A stretch of 63,844 nt of DNA, counting the filler, from Octopus bimaculoides (taxonomy: Eukaryota), in the NCBI RefSeq assembly GCF_001194135.2. It is 8 parts of 6 records of this genome, joined end to end, with 100 filler letters (N's around TTAATTAATTAA, not from the genome) between each part and the next. Parts side by side here need not be neighbours in the genome. Positions count along the whole stretch, not along the records: positions 14,508 to 33,173 come from NC_069004.1; 7 more parts are not named here. One strand, 5' to 3'. The notes under the pieces are model-generated. The model was not told the origin of the DNA, did no database searches, and worked only from the letters and a program-made list of their open reading frames with translations. A program made the position numbers and the translations under genes. Below, one piece after another: positions 26,389 through 33,173 of this stretch (within the stretch, counting starts at the first letter, position 1; each line of letters begins with the position of its first letter).

Positions 26389-26669
26389 GTAAGTGATTAT
26401 CTGCCTCCCCCCCTATCGGGAGATTTTTAATCGTTACATTGTTATTACTGTTATGAAATGTTTACACAGATATTTTCTTTGCAAAACCCTTTGTATATCG
26501 TCTTGTGCTGTCCTTTAATGTTTTGAGTTATATTAGCCCTTGTGGCCAATAAAAAGAATTTATTATTATTATTATTTTAACTCAGAATGCAAAAACATGA
26601 AATGCTGCTAAGCATTTCATTCGGTGTAATACCAATTCTTCCAGCTTGCTTTCTTATAACAACTCATAA

Positions 26670-26900
26670 TCGTCTTTATTCTGGATTATTTGAGTCCTTT
26701 CATAAACCAAATGATAATATCAAGTATATAAATATATCATCTAACCATCCACTGTTAATAATACGGGTATTAGTTAAGAGTATTTCAATAAGGATATCTA
26801 AGTTATCTGCAAATAAAGAAATTTTGGAATTACTTGCACCATGTTACAATACTGCTGTAGCTAGGGCTGGATACTGAGAGAAAATTTAATACATACAAGA
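26670..26900 (+). mobile_element. Penelope-like element reverse transcriptase fragment
   Basis: FHKPNDNIKYINISSNHP..II...SISIRISKLSANKEI....Y..A..RAGY matches the PLE RT C-terminal pattern KPN..YI...SNHP...RLS.LS...AL..SGY. Confidence 0.75.
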
Positions 26901-27845
26901 CAGTCATACATAACTCTGCCAATTCTTCCAATAATAATAATACACATTTCACCTGGGAACGATAGTGGCTAAGTGGTGGTTCCACACTCTTCAAACTCCT
27001 GAAACTCTTGAACAAGGGCACCATCACTGGATGCAGTTTGAAGTCGGGTGGCACATAAAATACACCATTTTGAGCGTGGTCGTTGCCAGTACCGTCTGAC
27101 TGGCCTTCGTAGGATTTTCGAGCAAGATCGTTGCCAGTGCCCCTGGACTGGCTCTTGTGCGAGTGGCACATAAAATACACCATTTTGAGCATGGCCGTTG
27201 CCAGTACTGCCTGACTGGCCTTTGTGCGGGTGACACGTAAAAGCACCCACTACACTCTCTGAGTGGTTGGCGTTAGGAAGGGCATCCAGCTGTAGAAACT
27301 CTGCCAAATCAGATTGGAGCCTGGTGTAGCCATCTGGTTTCACCAGTCCTCAGTCAAATCGTCCAACCCATGCTAGCATGGAAAGCGGACGTTAAACGAT
27401 GATGATGATGATGATAACTTAGGACACATGTAATTCATAAATAATTGTTATAATTACATAACAAGAAGTAGTTGTGTATGACATGGGTGTTACATTAGAA
27501 ATATTTTCCAAATATAGGGAATTATAAACTTTATGTGTGTATACGTATACACTATATTAACATATCTATTATAATGTAATAAAAGTGACAGACAACAGGA
27601 CAGACACACACACACATATTCTGTTGCCTGTCACTTTTATCACTTTATAATAAATATATTTATACAATATATTTGCATGGAGCCTGGTGTAGCCATCCGG
27701 TTTCACCAGTCCTCAGTCAAATCGTCCAACCCATGCTAGCATGGAAAGCGGACGTTAAACGATGATGATGATGATGATGATGATATATCTATTATAATGT
27801 GCTAAAAACGACAGACAACCGGATGTGTGTGTGTGTGGTTACATA

Positions 27846-28710
27846 CAGGGTGCGATGGGTAAATTGTGACCATTTTATATTTTTAATTTCACGTGCGCAT
27901 TGTTTGTTTTTGATTTTGTCAACTACACAGTATAGTAGAGTCATTTGGGCACTGTCTGTGAGAAAAACAGCACCGTGACACAATTCACTCTGCCAGAAAT
28001 TTGGAAATGACATGCTGTACTGCTTGGCATTTGCGCCGGAAACTCCAATGCGAACATTTCAGAGTGTTTGGGTGTCAATCTGAGGACATGTACCAAGAGT
28101 GATAAAAATGAAACATCCAGTCAACATCATGGTGTTTGGAGTAATCACTAGTGATGGTGACGGTATGCCTCCATTCATCTTCCCACGCGGCCTCAGACTC
28201 AACATGAAGGCCTACATCAAGTGCTGGAGGAGGTAGTGCTGCCCTGGGTCAAGAGGGTGGCTGCTGGAAGACCCTATGTCTGGCAACAGGACTCTGCACC
28301 ATGCCACACAAGCAGGAGACACTAACCATGGCTGTCAGACAGTTTCTGCAAACACATCACCCCTAACATCTGGCTGCCTAACTCTCCAGACTGCAACCCC
28401 CTTGATTATTATGTGTAGGGCATAGAGCAAGAGACCAACAACACTCTTTGTAACACCAAAGATGAACTGAAGGCAAGGATTATGGCAGCATTCACCAACT
28501 TAAAGGAGACCATCCAGAAGATTTGCAGGAGATTTCGAAATCGTCTGGAGGCTGTGGTTGAAGCCAGTGGTGATTTTATTGAATAAATTTACTCTTTAGT
28601 ATTTTTAAGATATTTTTATGTAATCTTGGTAAATATTTCTGTTAAAATGAGATGTCAGCGTTATTTTCATTTTTGCGTAATTTAGACGACAGTTTATTCA
28701 CCGCACCTTG
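27846..28710 (+). mobile_element. Internally deleted DD37D (maT) element with both TIRs
   Basis: TA|cagggtgcgatgggtaaattgt ... acagtttattcaccgcaccttg; same transposase remnants as 12887-13725. Confidence 0.85.
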
Positions 28711-29809
28711 TGTGTATGTGTGTGTGTGTGTGTGTGTGTCTATATCCTGTTATCTGCCACTTTCTTTTTCTCACTTCCCACTCCTGTCTCACACTAGATT
28801 TTATTTGACTAGAAGTCTCTCTTGCCTTATGTCTGTCTCCTCTCTAACAGGTAACACACACATATATCCAACACCAAGGAAGGTCCTACTATCTGTCCTT
28901 GCCTCCCCCACTCCATCATATTGCCCCCTCCTCTCGTTCTCTATCTGCACAAATACCCTCCTCTTTCAAACATTGGACATTTTATCAATAAAAGGAAGGT
29001 CTTAATCCATGTGTCTCACTCTCTCCCTCTCACTCTCTTTCTCTCTCTCTCTCTCTCTATCATACATACACACACACACACTTTCGCACACTCTCAAACT
29101 CTATCACACATACTCTCTCTCTCACACACACTACCACAAACAGACACGCGTGCACGTGCACTCTCTCTCACAAACACACACACACACTCTCTCTCACAAA
29201 CACACACACACTCTCTCACAAACACACACACTCTCTCTCACACACACTGTCACACATACACATGTACATTATGACAGATACTACTCCCCCTCCGACACAC
29301 ACACCTCACAAACACTACATTCATTCATCTTCTAAAAAGCTCACTGACCTACATTCCTACAGTTTCACACTTATATCTTCATTTGTCTCAATTCTTCAAA
29401 TGAGTCCGTTTTCTCTATCATCATCATCATCATCTTCTTCATTATCATTGCCTTCATCAGCCATAGTCAAAACGGTCGTCACAGGACTATCTTTTACCAT
29501 AGTTCTCTTGGATAATAGTCAACCACAGCTAAACAACAACAACAACATCACAGTCATCACCAGCCCGGTCTGACCACCACTACCAAATAGGTTGAGATGG
29601 TACCCCAATCTGTCCTGGCTACCCAAGACAGGTATGTCTAGATAGTGCTCCAGTCTGGCCAGACCATCGCAGCCAAGTAAGCTGTAGGAATGCTCCCATC
29701 TGATTTCCACAATTAAGTACTCTTTGACAGAAATATGCTAACAGAAGGGGTTAAGACGATCCAAATCAAAATCTTCCATTAGGGTTTCGGGTTATTCTTT
29801 TACTTGTTT

Positions 29810-30186
29810 CAGTTATTTGACTATGGCCATGCTGGAGCACAGCCTTTAGTCGAGCAAATCGACCCCAGGACTTATTCTTTGTAAGCCTAGTACTTATTCT
29901 ATCAGTCTCTTTTGCCGAACTGCTAAGTTATGGGGACCTAAACACACCAGCATCAGTTGTCAAGTGATGTTGGGGGAACAAACAGAGACCCACAAACATA
30001 TATATATATATATACATATGCGATGGGCTTCTTTCAGTTTCCGTCTACCAAATACACTCACAAGGCTTTGGTCAGCCCGAGGGCTATAGCAGAAGACACT
30101 TGCCCAAGGTGCCACGCAGTGGGACTGAACCTGTGACCATGTGGTTGGCAAGCAAGCTACTTACCACACAGCCACTCCTGCGCCTA
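29810..30186 (-). mobile_element. SINE family B
   Basis: Reverse-complement homolog of 18920-19285. Confidence 0.8.
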
Positions 30187-30430
30187 TGTTTTAAACATTA
30201 GCTTAATGAGTGAGCTGTTTTATTGAATTTTTCCAAAATTAATTGACACAAAGGCAGTGTATTTCAACAGTAATGTGGTAATTAAAAGGTTAATTTTGAA
30301 AATTATGAAGAATTTAATAAAAGAACTGTTATATTAAGTTGATATTTGGAAAATAGATTTACATGAAATTTTGATAGAAACTTTTAATTTAGATAATTTT
30401 TATATATTCTATGAATCATTTGATATTTAA

Positions 30431-30650
30431 CCCTTTCGTTACTGTATTTATTTTGAGATGCTCTATATTTCTTTCAATTACTTTAAATATAACAACAAAT
30501 TTAGTACAATAACTTAGTTATCGTTAAGCTAATGTTAGGACCATAAATTGTGACTAAGGTTTGGTGGAAGATTTTAATTCAGAACTTATGGAATCAAGAC
30601 CTTTGTACGACAGAGCCAGAGCCGGTTTCAGCCGGTTGTTAACGAAAGGG
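30431..30650. mobile_element. TTAA-flanked MITE (piggyBac-like termini)
   Basis: TTAA|CCCTTTCGTTA ... TAACGAAAGGG|TTAA. Related ends at ~24627, ~25705 and ~30290. Confidence 0.8.
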
Positions 30651-31319
30651 TTAACTTAAATATGTTCACTGGTTTCAGCTGTTTGGACTACATCTACATT
30701 AGTGTCATCATTTGTTTGTTTTATTTTTTTGTTGTTGTTCTCCTATCACTATGACCTCATTAGTTTTAAAGTTGATTTCCATAATATTATTTACATGTAC
30801 GTGATGCTGCATATTCTCTCTCTCCTCTCTCTCACACAGAGTTGTCTTTTATTTGCTTCAGTCTTTGGTCTGTGGCCATGCTGGGGTAATGCCTTGAAGG
30901 GTTTTAGTTGAACAAATTGACCCCAGTATTTATTGTTAAGCCTCATGTATTTTGTTGGTGTCTTATGCCAAACTACTAAGTTATGGGGATGTGAACAAAC
31001 ACGACTTGTCAAGTGGTGGTCGGGAACAAACACACATGTATACATACATATATACAATAAGCTCACAGTGTCATACATGCACCTATATATATATATACAT
31101 ATTTGTGTGTGTGTGTGTATGTGAACCATCAGGAAAAAATGCACTTGTTTTCACAGCAACCACAAACCGGATGTGTCTATTCACCTCCAACAATAGAGAG
31201 CACTTTCGCTGATGAGTGCAGTGTTACATAATCAGACTGTTACCTAACACTGTTGAAACCCTGGTGTGAAACTGATTGGTAAGATCGGCCATAATGGATA
31301 TTTGATACTGTACACTTTG

Positions 31320-31352
<33 letters not shown>

Positions 31353-31502
31353 NNNNNNNNNNNNNNNNNNNNNNNNNNNNNNNNNNNNNNNNNNNNNNNN
31401 NNNNNNNNNNNNNNNNNNNNNNNNNNNNNNNNNNNNNNNNNNNNNNNNNNNNNNNNNNNNNNNNNNNNNNNNNNNNNNNNNNNNNNNNNNNNNNNNNNNN
31501 NN

Positions 31503-31567
<65 letters not shown>

Positions 31568-31869
31568 TACACACACAGGTGCAGACATGGTTTTTCAGTA
31601 AAAAGTCTGTTTCCTAATCTCATGGTTTTGTGTTCAGCCCTACTGCATGGCACTTTGGGTGAGTGTCCTCTACTATAGCCCCAGGCTGACCAAAGCCTTG
31701 CGAGTGGATTTGGTTGATGGAAACTTAATAAAGCCCATAGTAATTATATATAATATATATTATTTATTATAATAAAGGGTAAAAATCATTAATGATTTTA
31801 CCAAGGGGTCAGTGCGAAAATAAAAAAATTATAGGTGAATTTTACAAATATTAAAATAATTATAATCAG

Positions 31870-32042
31870 AATTATAATAAGGGACTGGCTAAAGGCCTCT
31901 CCACATGCTAGAAATGGATGCTAAAAGATGCTAATACCACAGCCTGTGTTTCATTTTTTTTAGTTTCTAAGGTGGTATTAGCATCATTTGGCATCTATTT
32001 CTAGCACGTAGAGAGGCTTATAGCCAGTCTCTTGTTATAATT
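31870..32042. repeat. Imperfect inverted repeat (71-bp arms, 31-nt loop)
   Basis: 31870-31940 versus the reverse complement of 31972-32042: 9 mismatches and no indels by manual alignment. Confidence 0.9.
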
Positions 32043-32073
32043 ATGTATATAACTATTATAATATTTATATATG

Positions 32074-32105
<32 letters not shown>

Positions 32106-32199
32106 CTTTGCCTATGTGTCTACCTAACCCATGCTGGCATGGGTTGGGTAGACCTTAAATGATAATGATCATGCATACATACATACATACAAATATGTA

Positions 32200-32230
<31 letters not shown>

Positions 32231-32231
<1 letters not shown>

Positions 32232-32394
32232 CCGGAGTAAGCACATAAAATGTGCAACAAGGTGGAAAAAAAGAGTGCTCAAATACCAGAGGTAGAGTAA
32301 TATGCTTAATTTAAAAGCAGCACTGTCCGATGAACGGGAACGTGAAACTCCGAGTAACAGTCTTTTGTTATATTTTCTGCTGCTGTAAATAAAG
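32231..32394 (+). mobile_element. Short non-coding hammerhead-bearing element flanked by (TA)n (Penelope-terminus or retrozyme-like)
   Basis: (TA)n on both sides; arms 32301-32322 and 32378-32399 are mutually complementary around the ribozyme. Its 3' part recurs at 14508-14550. Confidence 0.55.
32322..32361 (+). ncRNA. Minimal type-I hammerhead ribozyme motif (U4C variant)
   Basis: ACTGT-CCGATGA-ACG(GGAA)CGT-GAA-ACTC(C)GAGT-A^-ACAGT: stem I 5 bp, stem II 3 bp, near-palindromic stem III, GUA cleavage triplet. Confidence 0.65.
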
Positions 32395-32552
32395 TATATA
32401 TATATACACACACACACATATATATCATCATCTTCATCATTGTTTAACGTCTGCTTTCCATGGTGGTCGGGTGAGTGAGTATTGTATTGTATTCTTTCCT
32501 TCATGAATGTCGTTCCCGTTCAAACTCAGAGTGGACCTTTATTCTCTTGCAG

Positions 32553-32603
32553 ATATATATCTGGGGAGGCAAATATCACCAGTATCAAATCAAAATAATT
32601 TTG
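32553..32603 (+). CDS. IRAK4: Probable 51-nt linker micro-exon of the IRAK4-like gene (DIYLGRQISPVSNQNNFG)
   Basis: cctttattctcttgcag|ATATA...AATTTTG|GTGAGT; phase 1-1 and open in frame. No homology evidence. Confidence 0.6.
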
Positions 32604-32895
32604 GTGAGTCATTTGGTTTTTTTTTTTCCCCTCTTTTACTTTATATTTCATCATCATCATCCTCATAATATCCATTTCCTGTGCTGGCATGGTTTGAACA
32701 ATTTGACAGGAGCTGGGAAGGCTCAGGGACCACACCAGGCACTCCTATGGCTGGATGCCCTTCCTAACACCAACCACTTTACAGAGTGTGCTGTTCCTTA
32801 CTCTGAGGAATCCTTGAGGTAGCCATAAGCAGTGAACATGCTTTATCAGCATACAACTAGATTTTAAATTTAGATTTAAACTTTATATATATATA

Positions 32896-33173
32896 CTAGC
32901 AGAAATACCCGGCGTTGCCCGGGTTAAAGAGAATAATGAAATCTAAAAACGCCGTCTAGACTACGCATCGTCTTTATATATAGAAATGTATATACACACA
33001 CGCACCCAAACACACGTATATATATGTATATCAATATAAATATATGAAAGTCAATGAAGTTTCGTAAAAGAAGGTGATCATGTACATACTTTCTTGCTGT
33101 TGTGATTATAACACCTCGTTGTAAACAATGTTCCTTGTTTTCCCTTGTGGAGCATATACAAATAGGTTTTTTT
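32896..33173 (-). mobile_element. Helitron 3' end
   Basis: Minus strand CCCGGGCAACGCCGGG hairpin, 8 nt, then CTAG|T; truncated by the spacer. Confidence 0.75.

What the first reader, a model, noticed from the sequence alone, without database searches (positions are those of the whole stretch)
32322..32361. Sense-oriented hammerhead motif in an IRAK4-like intron, ~190 nt upstream of a micro-exon
Seen: ACTGT CCGATGA ACG-GGAA-CGT GAA ACTC-C-GAGT A^ACAGT on the same strand as the gene, extended by long-range pairing of 32301-32322 with 32378-32399. The core carries U4C and an A-U closing pair. Inference: it could cut the nascent pre-mRNA, affecting inclusion of exon 32553-32603 or producing truncated death-domain-only transcripts. 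Dimer dependence may make it weak.
Basis: partly seen in the sequence, partly recalled or inferred. Interest (0 to 1): 0.7.

Follow-up and report, generated by a model that had tools for sequence, protein, structure and literature searches.

The report
Weak hammerhead-like motif in an intronic repeat
A 40-base sequence that looks like a minimal self-cutting "hammerhead" RNA really is there, but it sits in a short repeated element inside a microsatellite, has a weakened core, and is most likely an inactive passenger, not a regulator of the immune-kinase gene around it.

Summary
My descriptor scan expects about 0.01 motifs this good per piece. The closing stem is in the strongest 1.2% of same-geometry positions. 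Neither figure is significant on its own at genome-scan scale; together they make pure chance less likely.

The motif is not free-standing. It lies near the 3' end of a ~163-bp element (32232-32394) embedded in a TA microsatellite. A second copy of the element's 3' part, cut by the piece edge, is at 14508-14547 and also ends ...AAATAAAG + (TA)n.

This best fits a solo copy of a hammerhead-bearing short retroelement of the Penelope-like-element / retrozyme kind.

As a ribozyme it looks poor:
- U4C in the core and A-U instead of G10.1-C11.1.
- Helices II and III are only 3 bp.
- Helix III forms only between two copies.
- The hammerhead fold is strongly disfavoured against competing folds.
- No Rfam hammerhead model matches, even at E<=10.
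- There is no tandem partner.

The host gene does encode an IRAK4/Tube-type death domain. The micro-exon is plausible but unverified. A splicing or truncation role has no support. No related sequence could be retrieved from any collection, so the family assignment is inferred. Low interest.

The parts
32232..32394 (+). Putative short interspersed element copy (~163 bp, 38% GC) that carries the motif. Its boundaries are inferred.
   Evidence: It is preceded by (TG)n(TA)n ending at 32231 and followed by (TA)n(CA)n(TA)n from 32395. The 3' boundary AAATAAAG|(TA)n is shared with the second copy. The 5' boundary rests on the microsatellite flank only.
32322..32361 (+). Hammerhead-like motif. Helix I 5' strand 32322-32326; core CCGAUGA 32327-32333 (U4C at 32328); helix II 32334-32336/32341-32343 with loop GGAA; GAA 32344-32346; helix III segment ACUCCGAGU 32347-32355; A17 at 32356; helix I 3' strand 32357-32361.
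   Evidence: Read directly. It is the only hit of the descriptor scans, with 0.01-0.02 expected per piece. No Rfam hammerhead match.
32300..32321 (+). 5' arm of the closing stem that extends helix I.
   Evidence: Pairs with 32378-32399 in the MFE and centroid folds. The duplex is -18.9 kcal/mol, in the 1.15% tail of the piece.
32362..32377 (+). 16-nt one-sided internal loop (CUUUUGUUAUAUUUUC) between helix I and the closing stem. Part of it forms a competing hairpin with the helix I 3' strand.
   Evidence: The MFE fold pairs 32354-32360 with 32365-32371 instead of forming helix I.
32378..32399 (+). 3' arm of the closing stem. It contains AATAAA and the 3' end of the element.
   Evidence: It is conserved in the second copy.
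14508..14547 (+). Second copy of the element's 3' part (from the cleavage-site position to AAATAAAG), cut off by the piece edge and followed by a long (TA)n.
   Evidence: One search gives the sequence; blastn 32363-32400 vs 14516-14553, 92% over 39 nt, E 2.6e-09. One search gives the alignment.
32196..32231 (.). Upstream microsatellite (TG)n(TA)n, the likely target of insertion.
   Evidence: TRF rows 32196-32216 (TG) and 32216-32231 (TA); sequence.
32395..32423 (.). Downstream microsatellite (TA)n(CA)n(TA)n.
   Evidence: Sequence.
21897..22075 (+). Death-domain exon 1 of the host gene (ATG at 21897, donor CA|GTATGT).
   Evidence: for the sequence. Joined with exon 2 it gives Pfam Death_2 4.9e-10 and the IRAK4 death domain 5.9e-07.
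22861..23021 (+). Death-domain exon 2 (acceptor ...ttgtcag|G, donor AAAAG|GTAAG, ends in phase 1).
   Evidence: for the sequence; for homology.
32553..32603 (+). Candidate 51-nt exon. It is unverified.
   Evidence: Pyrimidine tract plus CAG acceptor and a G|GTGAGT donor. It is open in the one frame compatible with exon 2 (…VDVLK-DIYLGRQISPVSNQNNF). It matches no repeat in the piece. No transcript or homology support.

Best explanation
The motif is the hammerhead module of a short, non-coding interspersed element (~163 bp, 32232-32394) that inserted into a TA microsatellite. The insertion lies about 9.3 kb downstream of the death-domain exons of an IRAK4/Tube-like gene, on the same strand.

The best-fitting kind is the hammerhead-bearing retroelements of animals: Penelope-like elements (PLEs) and their non-autonomous derivatives (non-LTR retrozymes, SINE-like elements). 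In those elements a type-I hammerhead has a short helix I, an internal loop 1, a closing stem and a short palindromic helix III. It processes multimeric element transcripts by pairing two copies through helix III.

Here there is a lone copy. It carries U4C, an A-U pair at 10.1-11.1, 3-bp helices II and III, and a competing hairpin that captures the helix I 3' strand. I therefore expect little or no self-cleavage of the host pre-mRNA. The copy is a tolerated passenger, not a regulator.

Shown: the motif, the closing stem, the second copy, the microsatellite flanks and the death-domain gene.

Inferred: retroelement ancestry, hammerhead ancestry of the family, and inactivity.
For: - The motif has 10 of 11 core positions and three uninterrupted helices. 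It is the only hit in the piece and 0.01 are expected.
- There is an independent closing stem of -18.9 kcal/mol, in the 1.15% tail (z = -3.0). This gives the layout 'helix I - loop 1 - closing stem' drawn for PLE minimal hammerheads (PMC4209133).
- The helix III segment ACUCCGAGU is nearly self-complementary. It does not fold alone (0.0 kcal/mol), but two copies pair at -7.8 kcal/mol (8 bp plus a C.C mismatch). This matches the palindromic, dimer-type helix III of metazoan type-I and PLE hammerheads.
- It lies in a repeat. A second copy of the 3' 39 nt is 92% identical with the same end, AAATAAAG + (TA)n.
- Copy 1 has TA repeats on both sides. PLEs show insertion bias for microsatellites, (TA)n in Naiads, and a 30-40-bp 'tail' at the ends of insertions (PMC8557442; PMC11167929). 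Here 38 nt separate the cleavage site from the element's end.
- Most PLE-type hammerheads occur as dispersed single motifs, not in full elements.
- For weak activity: U4C lowers activity considerably in vitro (PMC3088659). The probability of the hammerhead fold is 4e-3 for the 40-mer and about 1e-6 in context. There is no tandem partner. PLE minimal hammerheads cleave poorly even as dimers.
Against: - No Rfam hammerhead model reports it, even at E<=10.
- Features reported as typical of PLE minimal hammerheads are missing: the G10.1-C11.1 pair, an unpaired nucleotide between 9 and 10.1, and a 6-8-bp helix II.
- Every helix is at the minimum length, which is also what a chance match looks like.
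- There is no reverse-transcriptase or GIY-YIG remnant and no tandem arrangement in the piece.
- Only one complete copy is visible. The second copy is cut at the cleavage-site position, so it cannot be checked for the core.
- No related sequence was found in any collection I could search. Family consensus and covariation are unknown.
- The inverted-repeat shape with TA flanks also fits a MITE.
Confidence: 0.5

Rival explanations
1. Chance resemblance. The ~100-nt hairpin (32300-32399) is a property of an unrelated repeat, for example a MITE-like DNA element with imperfect terminal inverted repeats inserted at TA. Its 30-nt loop merely happens to resemble a hammerhead core with minimal helices.
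For: - The arms form a 22-23-bp imperfect inverted repeat flanked by TA-rich sequence.
- All helices are at the descriptor's minimum, there is one core mismatch, A-U replaces G10.1-C11.1, and no Rfam hit appears.
- The chance rate of about 0.5 per Mb means that many such motifs exist in a large genome.
- About half or more of such a genome is repeats, so lying in a repeat discriminates little.
Against: - The joint chance of motif (0.01 per piece) and closing stem (0.0115) is about 1e-4 per piece if the two are independent.
- The near-palindromic helix III and the helix I / loop 1 / closing stem layout are specific to metazoan type-I hammerheads.
- 67 nt of non-repetitive sequence lie between the upstream (TA)n and the left arm. 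That fits a 163-bp unit better than a 100-bp MITE, but it is not decisive.
- The motif is unusually CpG-rich for this CpG-depleted piece: 4 CpG in 40 nt, which only 1.2% of windows reach.
Confidence: 0.3
2. One reading: a functional, sense-strand intronic hammerhead. It cleaves the nascent IRAK4-like pre-mRNA and thereby tunes inclusion of exon 32553-32603 or produces death-domain-only transcripts.
For: - It has the same strand as the gene and lies 192 nt upstream of a candidate exon with good splice sites.
- Intronic type-I hammerheads conserved in amniote genes are a precedent (PMC6155905).
- A natural U4C hammerhead keeps enough activity in vivo for viroid infectivity (PMC3088659).
Against: - It lies in a dispersed repeat within a microsatellite.
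- The hammerhead fold is strongly disfavoured.
- Helix III needs a second copy and none is nearby.
- No Rfam match to HH9, HH10 or Hammerhead_1.
- No conservation evidence is obtainable.
- Retrozyme copies are reported as depleted from introns in Xenopus, which suggests that active ones there are harmful rather than recruited (bioRxiv 10.64898/2026.07.22.740005).
- The exon itself is unverified.
Confidence: 0.04
3. A member of a currently active hammerhead retroelement family. This copy is one of many recent insertions whose hammerheads (with C4 as the family's own variant core) work as dimers in multimeric transcripts made elsewhere in the genome.
For: - All 11 helix base pairs are intact and only one core position deviates.
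- CpG content is high in a CpG-depleted background, which suggests little decay.
- The two copies are 92% identical.
- A-U at 10.1-11.1 would need two substitutions from G-C, so it is more likely ancestral to the family.
Against: - No tandem copies are present here.
- Only two copies are seen, one of them partial.
- No family data could be retrieved.
Confidence: 0.12

Closest known systems
Minimal type-I hammerheads of Penelope-like elements (Cervera & de la Pena 2014, PMC4209133)
   Same: - Type-I topology with a 5-bp helix I followed by an internal loop and a closing stem.
- A near-palindromic helix III that can only form between two copies.
- Occurrence as a dispersed single motif and low expected activity.
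- Microsatellite context, and about 38 nt from the cleavage site to the element's end, comparable with the 30-40-bp PLE 'tail' (PMC8557442, PMC11167929).
   Different: - Helix II is 3 bp, not 6-8 bp.
[quoted passage not shown]
- A-U replaces the highly conserved G10.1-C11.1, and the core has U4C.
- No pLTR, reverse-transcriptase or GIY-YIG sequence is visible nearby.
Non-LTR retrozymes of metazoans (Cervera & de la Pena 2020, PMC7229834; Li et al. 2026 bioRxiv 10.64898/2026.07.22.740005)
   Same: - A short, non-coding, AT-rich unit (163 bp, 38% GC) carrying one type-I hammerhead-like motif.
- 'Solo' monomers of such families are described.
   Different: - Retrozymes are defined by tandem arrays of >=2 units, each with a hammerhead. 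Here there is a single unit.
- Unit lengths reported are about 170-400 bp.
- Canonical retrozyme hammerheads have 6-bp helix I, 4-bp helix II and loop 1-loop 2 contacts that are not recognisable here.
Intronic hammerheads conserved in amniote genes (RECK and others; reviewed in PMC6155905)
   Same: Sense orientation inside a protein-coding gene, type-I topology, and presumed descent from retroelement hammerheads.
   Different: - Those have canonical cores, are active, are single-copy and are conserved across orders of animals.
- This one has a variant core, lies in a repeat and has no conservation evidence.
- Rfam HH9/HH10 models do not match it.
SINE-like hammerhead elements of schistosomes (Sm-alpha / Sj-alpha; reviewed in PMC6765202)
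   Same: A short, non-autonomous interspersed element with an internal type-I hammerhead.
   Different: - Those carry a pol III promoter and a canonical, active hammerhead.
- No tRNA-like part is detectable here.
- The core is variant.

Membership tests
Hammerhead ribozyme (type I) | Conserved core nucleotides C3, G5, A6, G8, A9, G12, A13, A14, the A15.1-U16.1 pair, and H17 (not G) | tested here: met
   All are present at 32327-32333, 32344-32347, 32355 and 32356.
Hammerhead ribozyme (type I) | U at core position 4 | tested here: not met
   C at 32328. U4C is a known natural variant that considerably lowers activity in vitro (PMC3088659).
Hammerhead ribozyme (type I) | Three helices radiating from the core, with helix I open | tested here: met
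   Helix I is 5 bp plus a closing stem. Helix II is 3 bp plus a GGAA loop. Helix III is 3 bp as a monomer or 8 bp as a dimer. All are at minimal length.
Hammerhead ribozyme (type I) | G10.1-C11.1 pair closing helix II (highly conserved, not absolute) | tested here: not met
   A32334-U32343. Its conservation is stated in PMC4209133.
Hammerhead ribozyme (type I) | Match to the curated covariance models (Rfam Hammerhead_1, _3, _II, HH9, HH10) | tested here: not met
   No hit at the gathering score on the piece. No hit at E<=10 on 501 nt or on 101 nt.
Hammerhead ribozyme (type I) | The catalytic fold is accessible to the RNA | tested here: inconclusive
   The nearest-neighbour model gives -2.7 kcal/mol for the three-helix fold against -4.7 kcal/mol MFE for the 40-mer. 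The fold probability is 4e-3 alone and about 1e-6 in 111-401 nt of context. Tertiary contacts and co-transcriptional folding are not modelled.
Hammerhead ribozyme (type I) | Site-specific self-cleavage 3' of position 17 | not testable with these tools
   Needs in vitro transcription or RNA-end mapping.
PLE minimal hammerhead | Location in the pseudo-LTR of an element encoding RT and GIY-YIG endonuclease, or in a truncated copy of one | tested here: inconclusive
   No RT (YxDD) or GIY-YIG motif was found in six frames of the piece, by regex only. Most such motifs are reported as solo copies. No family members could be retrieved.
PLE minimal hammerhead | [quoted passage not shown] | tested here: not met
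   Helix II is 3 bp with no bulge.
PLE minimal hammerhead | Short helix I (4-5 bp) with loop 1 and a closing stem; palindromic helix III / loop 3 allowing a dimer | tested here: met
   5-bp helix I, a 16-nt one-sided loop and a closing stem of -18.9 kcal/mol. The helix III duplex of two copies is -7.8 kcal/mol with one C.C mismatch.
PLE minimal hammerhead | Insertion signature: microsatellite target and a 30-40-bp tail | tested here: inconclusive
   (TA)n lies on both sides of copy 1 and 3' of copy 2. 38 nt separate the cleavage site from the element's end. Two copies are too few to define ends. The correspondence to the PLE tail is my inference from PMC8557442 and PMC11167929.
Non-LTR retrozyme | Tandem array of at least two units, each with a type-I hammerhead | tested here: not met
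   There is no direct or tandem repeat of the unit around 32232-32394. The other copy is 17.8 kb away.
Conserved intronic hammerhead (amniote type) | Conservation at the orthologous intron across species, with an active canonical core | not testable with these tools
   No orthologous locus could be fetched. The core is not canonical.

The most novel reading that the evidence does not exclude
A retroelement-derived hammerhead with a C4 variant core has been recruited in the sense strand of an intron of an invertebrate IRAK4/Tube-like gene. It cleaves the nascent transcript at a low rate or only under some condition (for example when partner copies are transcribed and supply the dimer). This shifts output towards death-domain-only, decoy-like isoforms of an innate-immunity kinase.
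Probability: 0.03. Interest if true: 0.65.

Novelty: new member of a known kind. Interest (0 to 1): 0.18.

Why it matters
If the main reading is right, this is one more dispersed, probably dead copy of the hammerhead-bearing retroelements that are already known to litter many animal genomes. It matters for annotation: it is a repeat, not a regulatory RNA. It also shows how often relaxed hammerhead descriptors fire, at about 0.5 chance hits per Mb. It would matter more only if the family turned out to use C4 and A10.1-U11.1 as its normal active core, or if the copy were conserved in the orthologous intron. In that case it would be an invertebrate counterpart of the amniote intronic hammerheads, whose function is still unknown.

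Tried and rejected
1. Rfam at the gathering score and at E<=10. There was no hammerhead hit. The hits near 32165-32254 are microsatellite artefacts (mir-3149, mir-297 models).

2. Looking for relatives elsewhere. All searches came back empty:
- the protein search with the death domain;
- exact-product look-ups for two ORFs, which might have extended the piece and shown the whole second copy;
- DNA pattern scans with the hammerhead segment and with the conserved 3' tail in viral contigs, metagenome contigs and prokaryotic genome contigs.
These collections evidently do not hold this animal or its relatives. For that reason I ran no further search on translations of the repeat.

3. Kinase exons downstream of the death domain. 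No HRDxK, DFG, GxGxxG, APE or VAVK motifs occur on the + strand of 23025-33173.

4. A PLE coding remnant near the element. None was found by motif regex.

5. A tRNA-derived SINE head. ARAGORN found nothing.

6. A looser 'minimal hammerhead' descriptor. It added only two overlapping hits inside a (GAT)n run at 25566-25609, which I rejected as low-complexity artefacts.

7. A mariner-like transposase remnant at about 28125-28560 (+), seen by eye. Pfam did not confirm it.

8. The paper by Lunse et al. on PLE hammerhead dimers and the EMBO Rep paper on intronic hammerheads are not held in the library.

Full report

Yes. One search shows 32322-32361 (+) = ACTGT CCGATGA ACG GGAA CGT GAA ACTC C GAGT A ACAGT, exactly as reported. 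In hammerhead numbering this reads:
- helix I (5 bp, ACUGU/ACAGU);
- C3 C4 G5 A6 U7 G8 A9;
- helix II (A10.1-U11.1, C-G, G-C, loop GGAA);
- G12 A13 A14;
- helix III starting with A15.1-U16.1;
- A17, so cleavage would fall between 32356 and 32357.

Ten of the eleven conserved core positions are present. Position 4 is C instead of U.

The reported long-range pairing is also real. The minimum-free-energy and centroid folds of 32295-32405 pair 32300-32322 with 32378-32399 (-26.7 kcal/mol, z = -3.0, none of 200 shuffles as stable).

One detail needs correction. ACUC-C-GAGU cannot close on a 1-nt loop. As a monomer helix III is at most 3 bp with a 3-nt loop, and the 9-mer is predicted not to fold at all (0.0 kcal/mol).

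**2. Is it more than chance?**

I wrote a descriptor just loose enough to admit the candidate: helix I 5 bp, helices II and III >=3 bp with 3-10-nt loops, G-U allowed, <=1 mismatch in the 11 core positions, and H17.
- On both strands of the piece it finds only this site, also when 2 mismatches are allowed.
- In 300 first-order Markov simulations of the piece the expectation is 0.01 hits, and 0 with an exact core.
- A looser 'minimal hammerhead' descriptor again finds the candidate, plus two artefacts inside a (GAT)n run. Its expectation is 0.02.

A rate of 0.01 per 18.7 kb is about 0.5 per Mb. A single such motif is therefore not significant in a scan of a large genome.

Independent support comes from the closing stem. 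The duplex of the 22 nt upstream with the 40 nt downstream is -18.9 kcal/mol. That is reached by 1.15% of 2434 positions of identical geometry in this same microsatellite-rich piece. If the two features are independent, the joint chance is about 1e-4 per piece.

**3. What surrounds it?**

The motif is not in unique intron sequence.
- Immediately upstream of 32232 lies (CATA)n(TG)n(TA)n. Immediately downstream of 32394 lies (TA)n(CA)n(TA)n.
- The very first bases of the piece, 14508-14547, are a second copy of the 3' part. AACGGTTTTTTTGTTATATTTCTGCTGCTTTTAAATAAAG is followed by a long (TA)n, against AACAGTCTTTTGTTATATTTTCTGCTGCTGTAAATAAAG + (TA)n at 32356-32394 (blastn 92% over 39 nt, E 2.6e-09).
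- That copy begins, because the piece begins, at the position equivalent to A17. Whether it has the core cannot be seen.

The motif therefore belongs to a dispersed repeat whose 3' end is ...AAATAAAG abutting a TA microsatellite. In copy 1 the unit delimited by the microsatellites is about 163 bp with 38% GC.

There is no tandem copy, no tRNA-like head, and no reverse-transcriptase or GIY-YIG motif in any frame of the piece.

Further out, the element and its microsatellites are bracketed by two tail-to-tail fragments of another abundant repeat with an (ATC/GAT)n tail (32126-32173 and 32424-32462). This is a nest of repeat insertions.

**4. The host gene**

ORF fragments at 21897-22075 and 22861-23021 (+) have canonical splice sites. 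Joined, they give a 113-residue death domain: Pfam Death_2 (Tube death domain) E 4.9e-10, the IRAK4 death domain of PDB 3MOP E 5.9e-07, and Tube 2.4e-06. 'IRAK4-like' is justified for the death domain.

No kinase signature occurs on the + strand between 23025 and the end of the piece. That the element is intronic is therefore an inference from the usual death-domain-plus-kinase architecture.

The 51-nt candidate exon 32553-32603 has a pyrimidine tract plus CAG acceptor and a G|GTGAGT donor. It is open in the single frame that continues exon 2, which ends in phase 1, giving ...VDVLK-DIYLGRQISPVSNQNNF. It matches no repeat in the piece. It is plausible but unverified.

**5. Would it work as a ribozyme?**

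Probably barely or not at all as it stands.
- U4C 'considerably decreases activity in vitro', although a viroid carrying it remains infectious (PMC3088659).
- The 10.1-11.1 pair is A-U, not the highly conserved G-C (PMC4209133).
- Helix II has 3 bp.
- Helix III does not form intramolecularly, but two copies can pair through it (8 bp plus a C.C mismatch, -7.8 kcal/mol). This is the dimer-dependent design known from newt, viroid and PLE hammerheads.
- No partner copy is nearby.
- The nearest-neighbour model gives -2.7 kcal/mol for the three-helix fold against -4.7 kcal/mol for the 40-mer's MFE. The hammerhead fold has a probability of 4e-3 in isolation and about 1e-6 within 111-401 nt of context. 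There a hairpin (32354-32360 with 32365-32371) captures the helix I 3' strand, and CCG of the core can pair with CGG of helix II. These models ignore tertiary contacts and co-transcriptional folding, so they indicate rather than prove.
- No Rfam hammerhead model reports the site at the gathering score or at E<=10, even when only 101 nt are searched.

**6. What is it most likely?**

The combination is the published picture of animal hammerheads in Penelope-like elements and their non-autonomous derivatives:
- type-I topology with a short helix I, an internal loop and a closing stem;
- a near-palindromic helix III;
- a short non-coding AT-rich unit that occurs as dispersed single copies.

These features are described in PMC4209133, PMC7229834, the bioRxiv preprint 10.64898/2026.07.22.740005 and the review PMC6765202.

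PLEs also show an insertion bias for microsatellites ((TA)n in Naiads) and leave a 30-40-bp 'tail' explained by internal initiation of reverse transcription (PMC8557442; PMC11167929). Both copies here end against (TA)n, and 38 nt separate the cleavage site from the element's end. I treat this last correspondence as suggestive only.

Several traits reported for PLE minimal hammerheads are absent: helix II of 6-8 bp, the extra nucleotide after A9, and G10.1-C11.1. The tandem arrangement that defines retrozymes is also absent. I therefore file it as 'works like / probably derived from' this kind, not as a demonstrated member.

My estimates:
- about 0.5 for a solo, probably inactive copy of a hammerhead-bearing retroelement;
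- a further 0.12 that the family is still active elsewhere with this variant core;
- 0.3 for a chance motif in an unrelated hairpin repeat or MITE;

**7. Organism**

I could not identify it with the tools.
- The protein search with the death domain found nothing.
- Exact-product look-ups found nothing.
- DNA pattern scans of the viral, metagenome and prokaryotic collections were empty.

The draft-assembly N runs, spliceosomal introns and an IRAK4/Tube death domain indicate an animal. From memory only, the repeat and microsatellite texture reminded me of cephalopod genomes. PLEs are annotated in Octopus genomes (PMC13282606; PMC8557442). None of the argument depends on that guess.

**8. Comparison with the known, and novelty**

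The closest known systems are PLE minimal hammerheads, solo retrozyme monomers, schistosome SINE-like hammerhead elements and, for the genic context, the conserved intronic hammerheads of amniotes (PMC6155905).

Nothing here lies outside those kinds. At most it is a new family member with an unusual (C4, A10.1-U11.1) core.

Interest is low. It would rise only if a family alignment or an orthologue comparison showed constraint on the motif, or if cleavage were demonstrated.

Noticed in passing
window 32126-32173 and 32424-32462; also 20506-20680, 23344-23531, 25401-25583, 27239-27421, 27678-27784, 32643-32789: An abundant interspersed repeat with an (ATC)n/(GAT)n microsatellite end ('...CATCATCATTGTTTAACGTCTGCTTTCCATGGTGG...') occurs at least eight times in both orientations. 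Two fragments sit tail-to-tail around the hammerhead-bearing element and its microsatellites.
   Followed up: partly
window 16104-16493, 20955-21097, 21235-21620, 26090-26273 (+) and 23637-24319 (inverted): A ~220-bp SINE-like family (GGCAGCGAGCTGGCAGAA.CGTTA.CATGCC.GGCGAAATGCTTAGCGG...GAGTTCAAATTC...) occurs in many copies. Some are in tandem pairs about 220 bp apart, and copies are 60-85% identical (families D7, D10, D15, D19). ARAGORN calls no tRNA in them.
   Followed up: partly
window ~28125-28560 (+): A frameshifted, stop-containing remnant that looks by eye like a Tc1/mariner-type transposase C-terminus (...YVWQQDSAPCH...SPDCNPLDYYV...). Pfam gave no hit at E<=0.01 for the stitched fragment, so it is unconfirmed.
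   Followed up: partly
window 15812-15999 and 16010-16197: A 188-bp direct duplication at 99% identity, separated only by a 10-N gap. It looks like an assembly artefact at a scaffold join, not a biological tandem repeat.
   Followed up: no
window 17160-17560, 24662-25234, 31353-31502, 16000-16009: Runs of N (401, 573, 150 and 10 bases) show that the piece comes from a gapped draft assembly. The gaps are flanked by (TA)n or (CA)n microsatellites. The top 'inverted repeats' I1-I6 are artefacts of N runs.
   Followed up: no
window 32322-32361 versus the whole piece: The piece is CpG-depleted (observed/expected 0.46), but the 40-nt motif holds 4 CpG (o/e 1.62). Only 1.2% of 40-nt windows in the piece have that many. 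This may mean a young insertion or constraint on the helices. One of the CpGs is created by the U4C change itself.
   Followed up: partly
window 32165-32254: Rfam E-value hits to mir-3149, mir-297 and similar models (E down to 5e-05, far below the gathering scores) are produced by the self-complementary (CATA)n(TG)n(TA)n microsatellite. They are not miRNA genes.
   Followed up: yes
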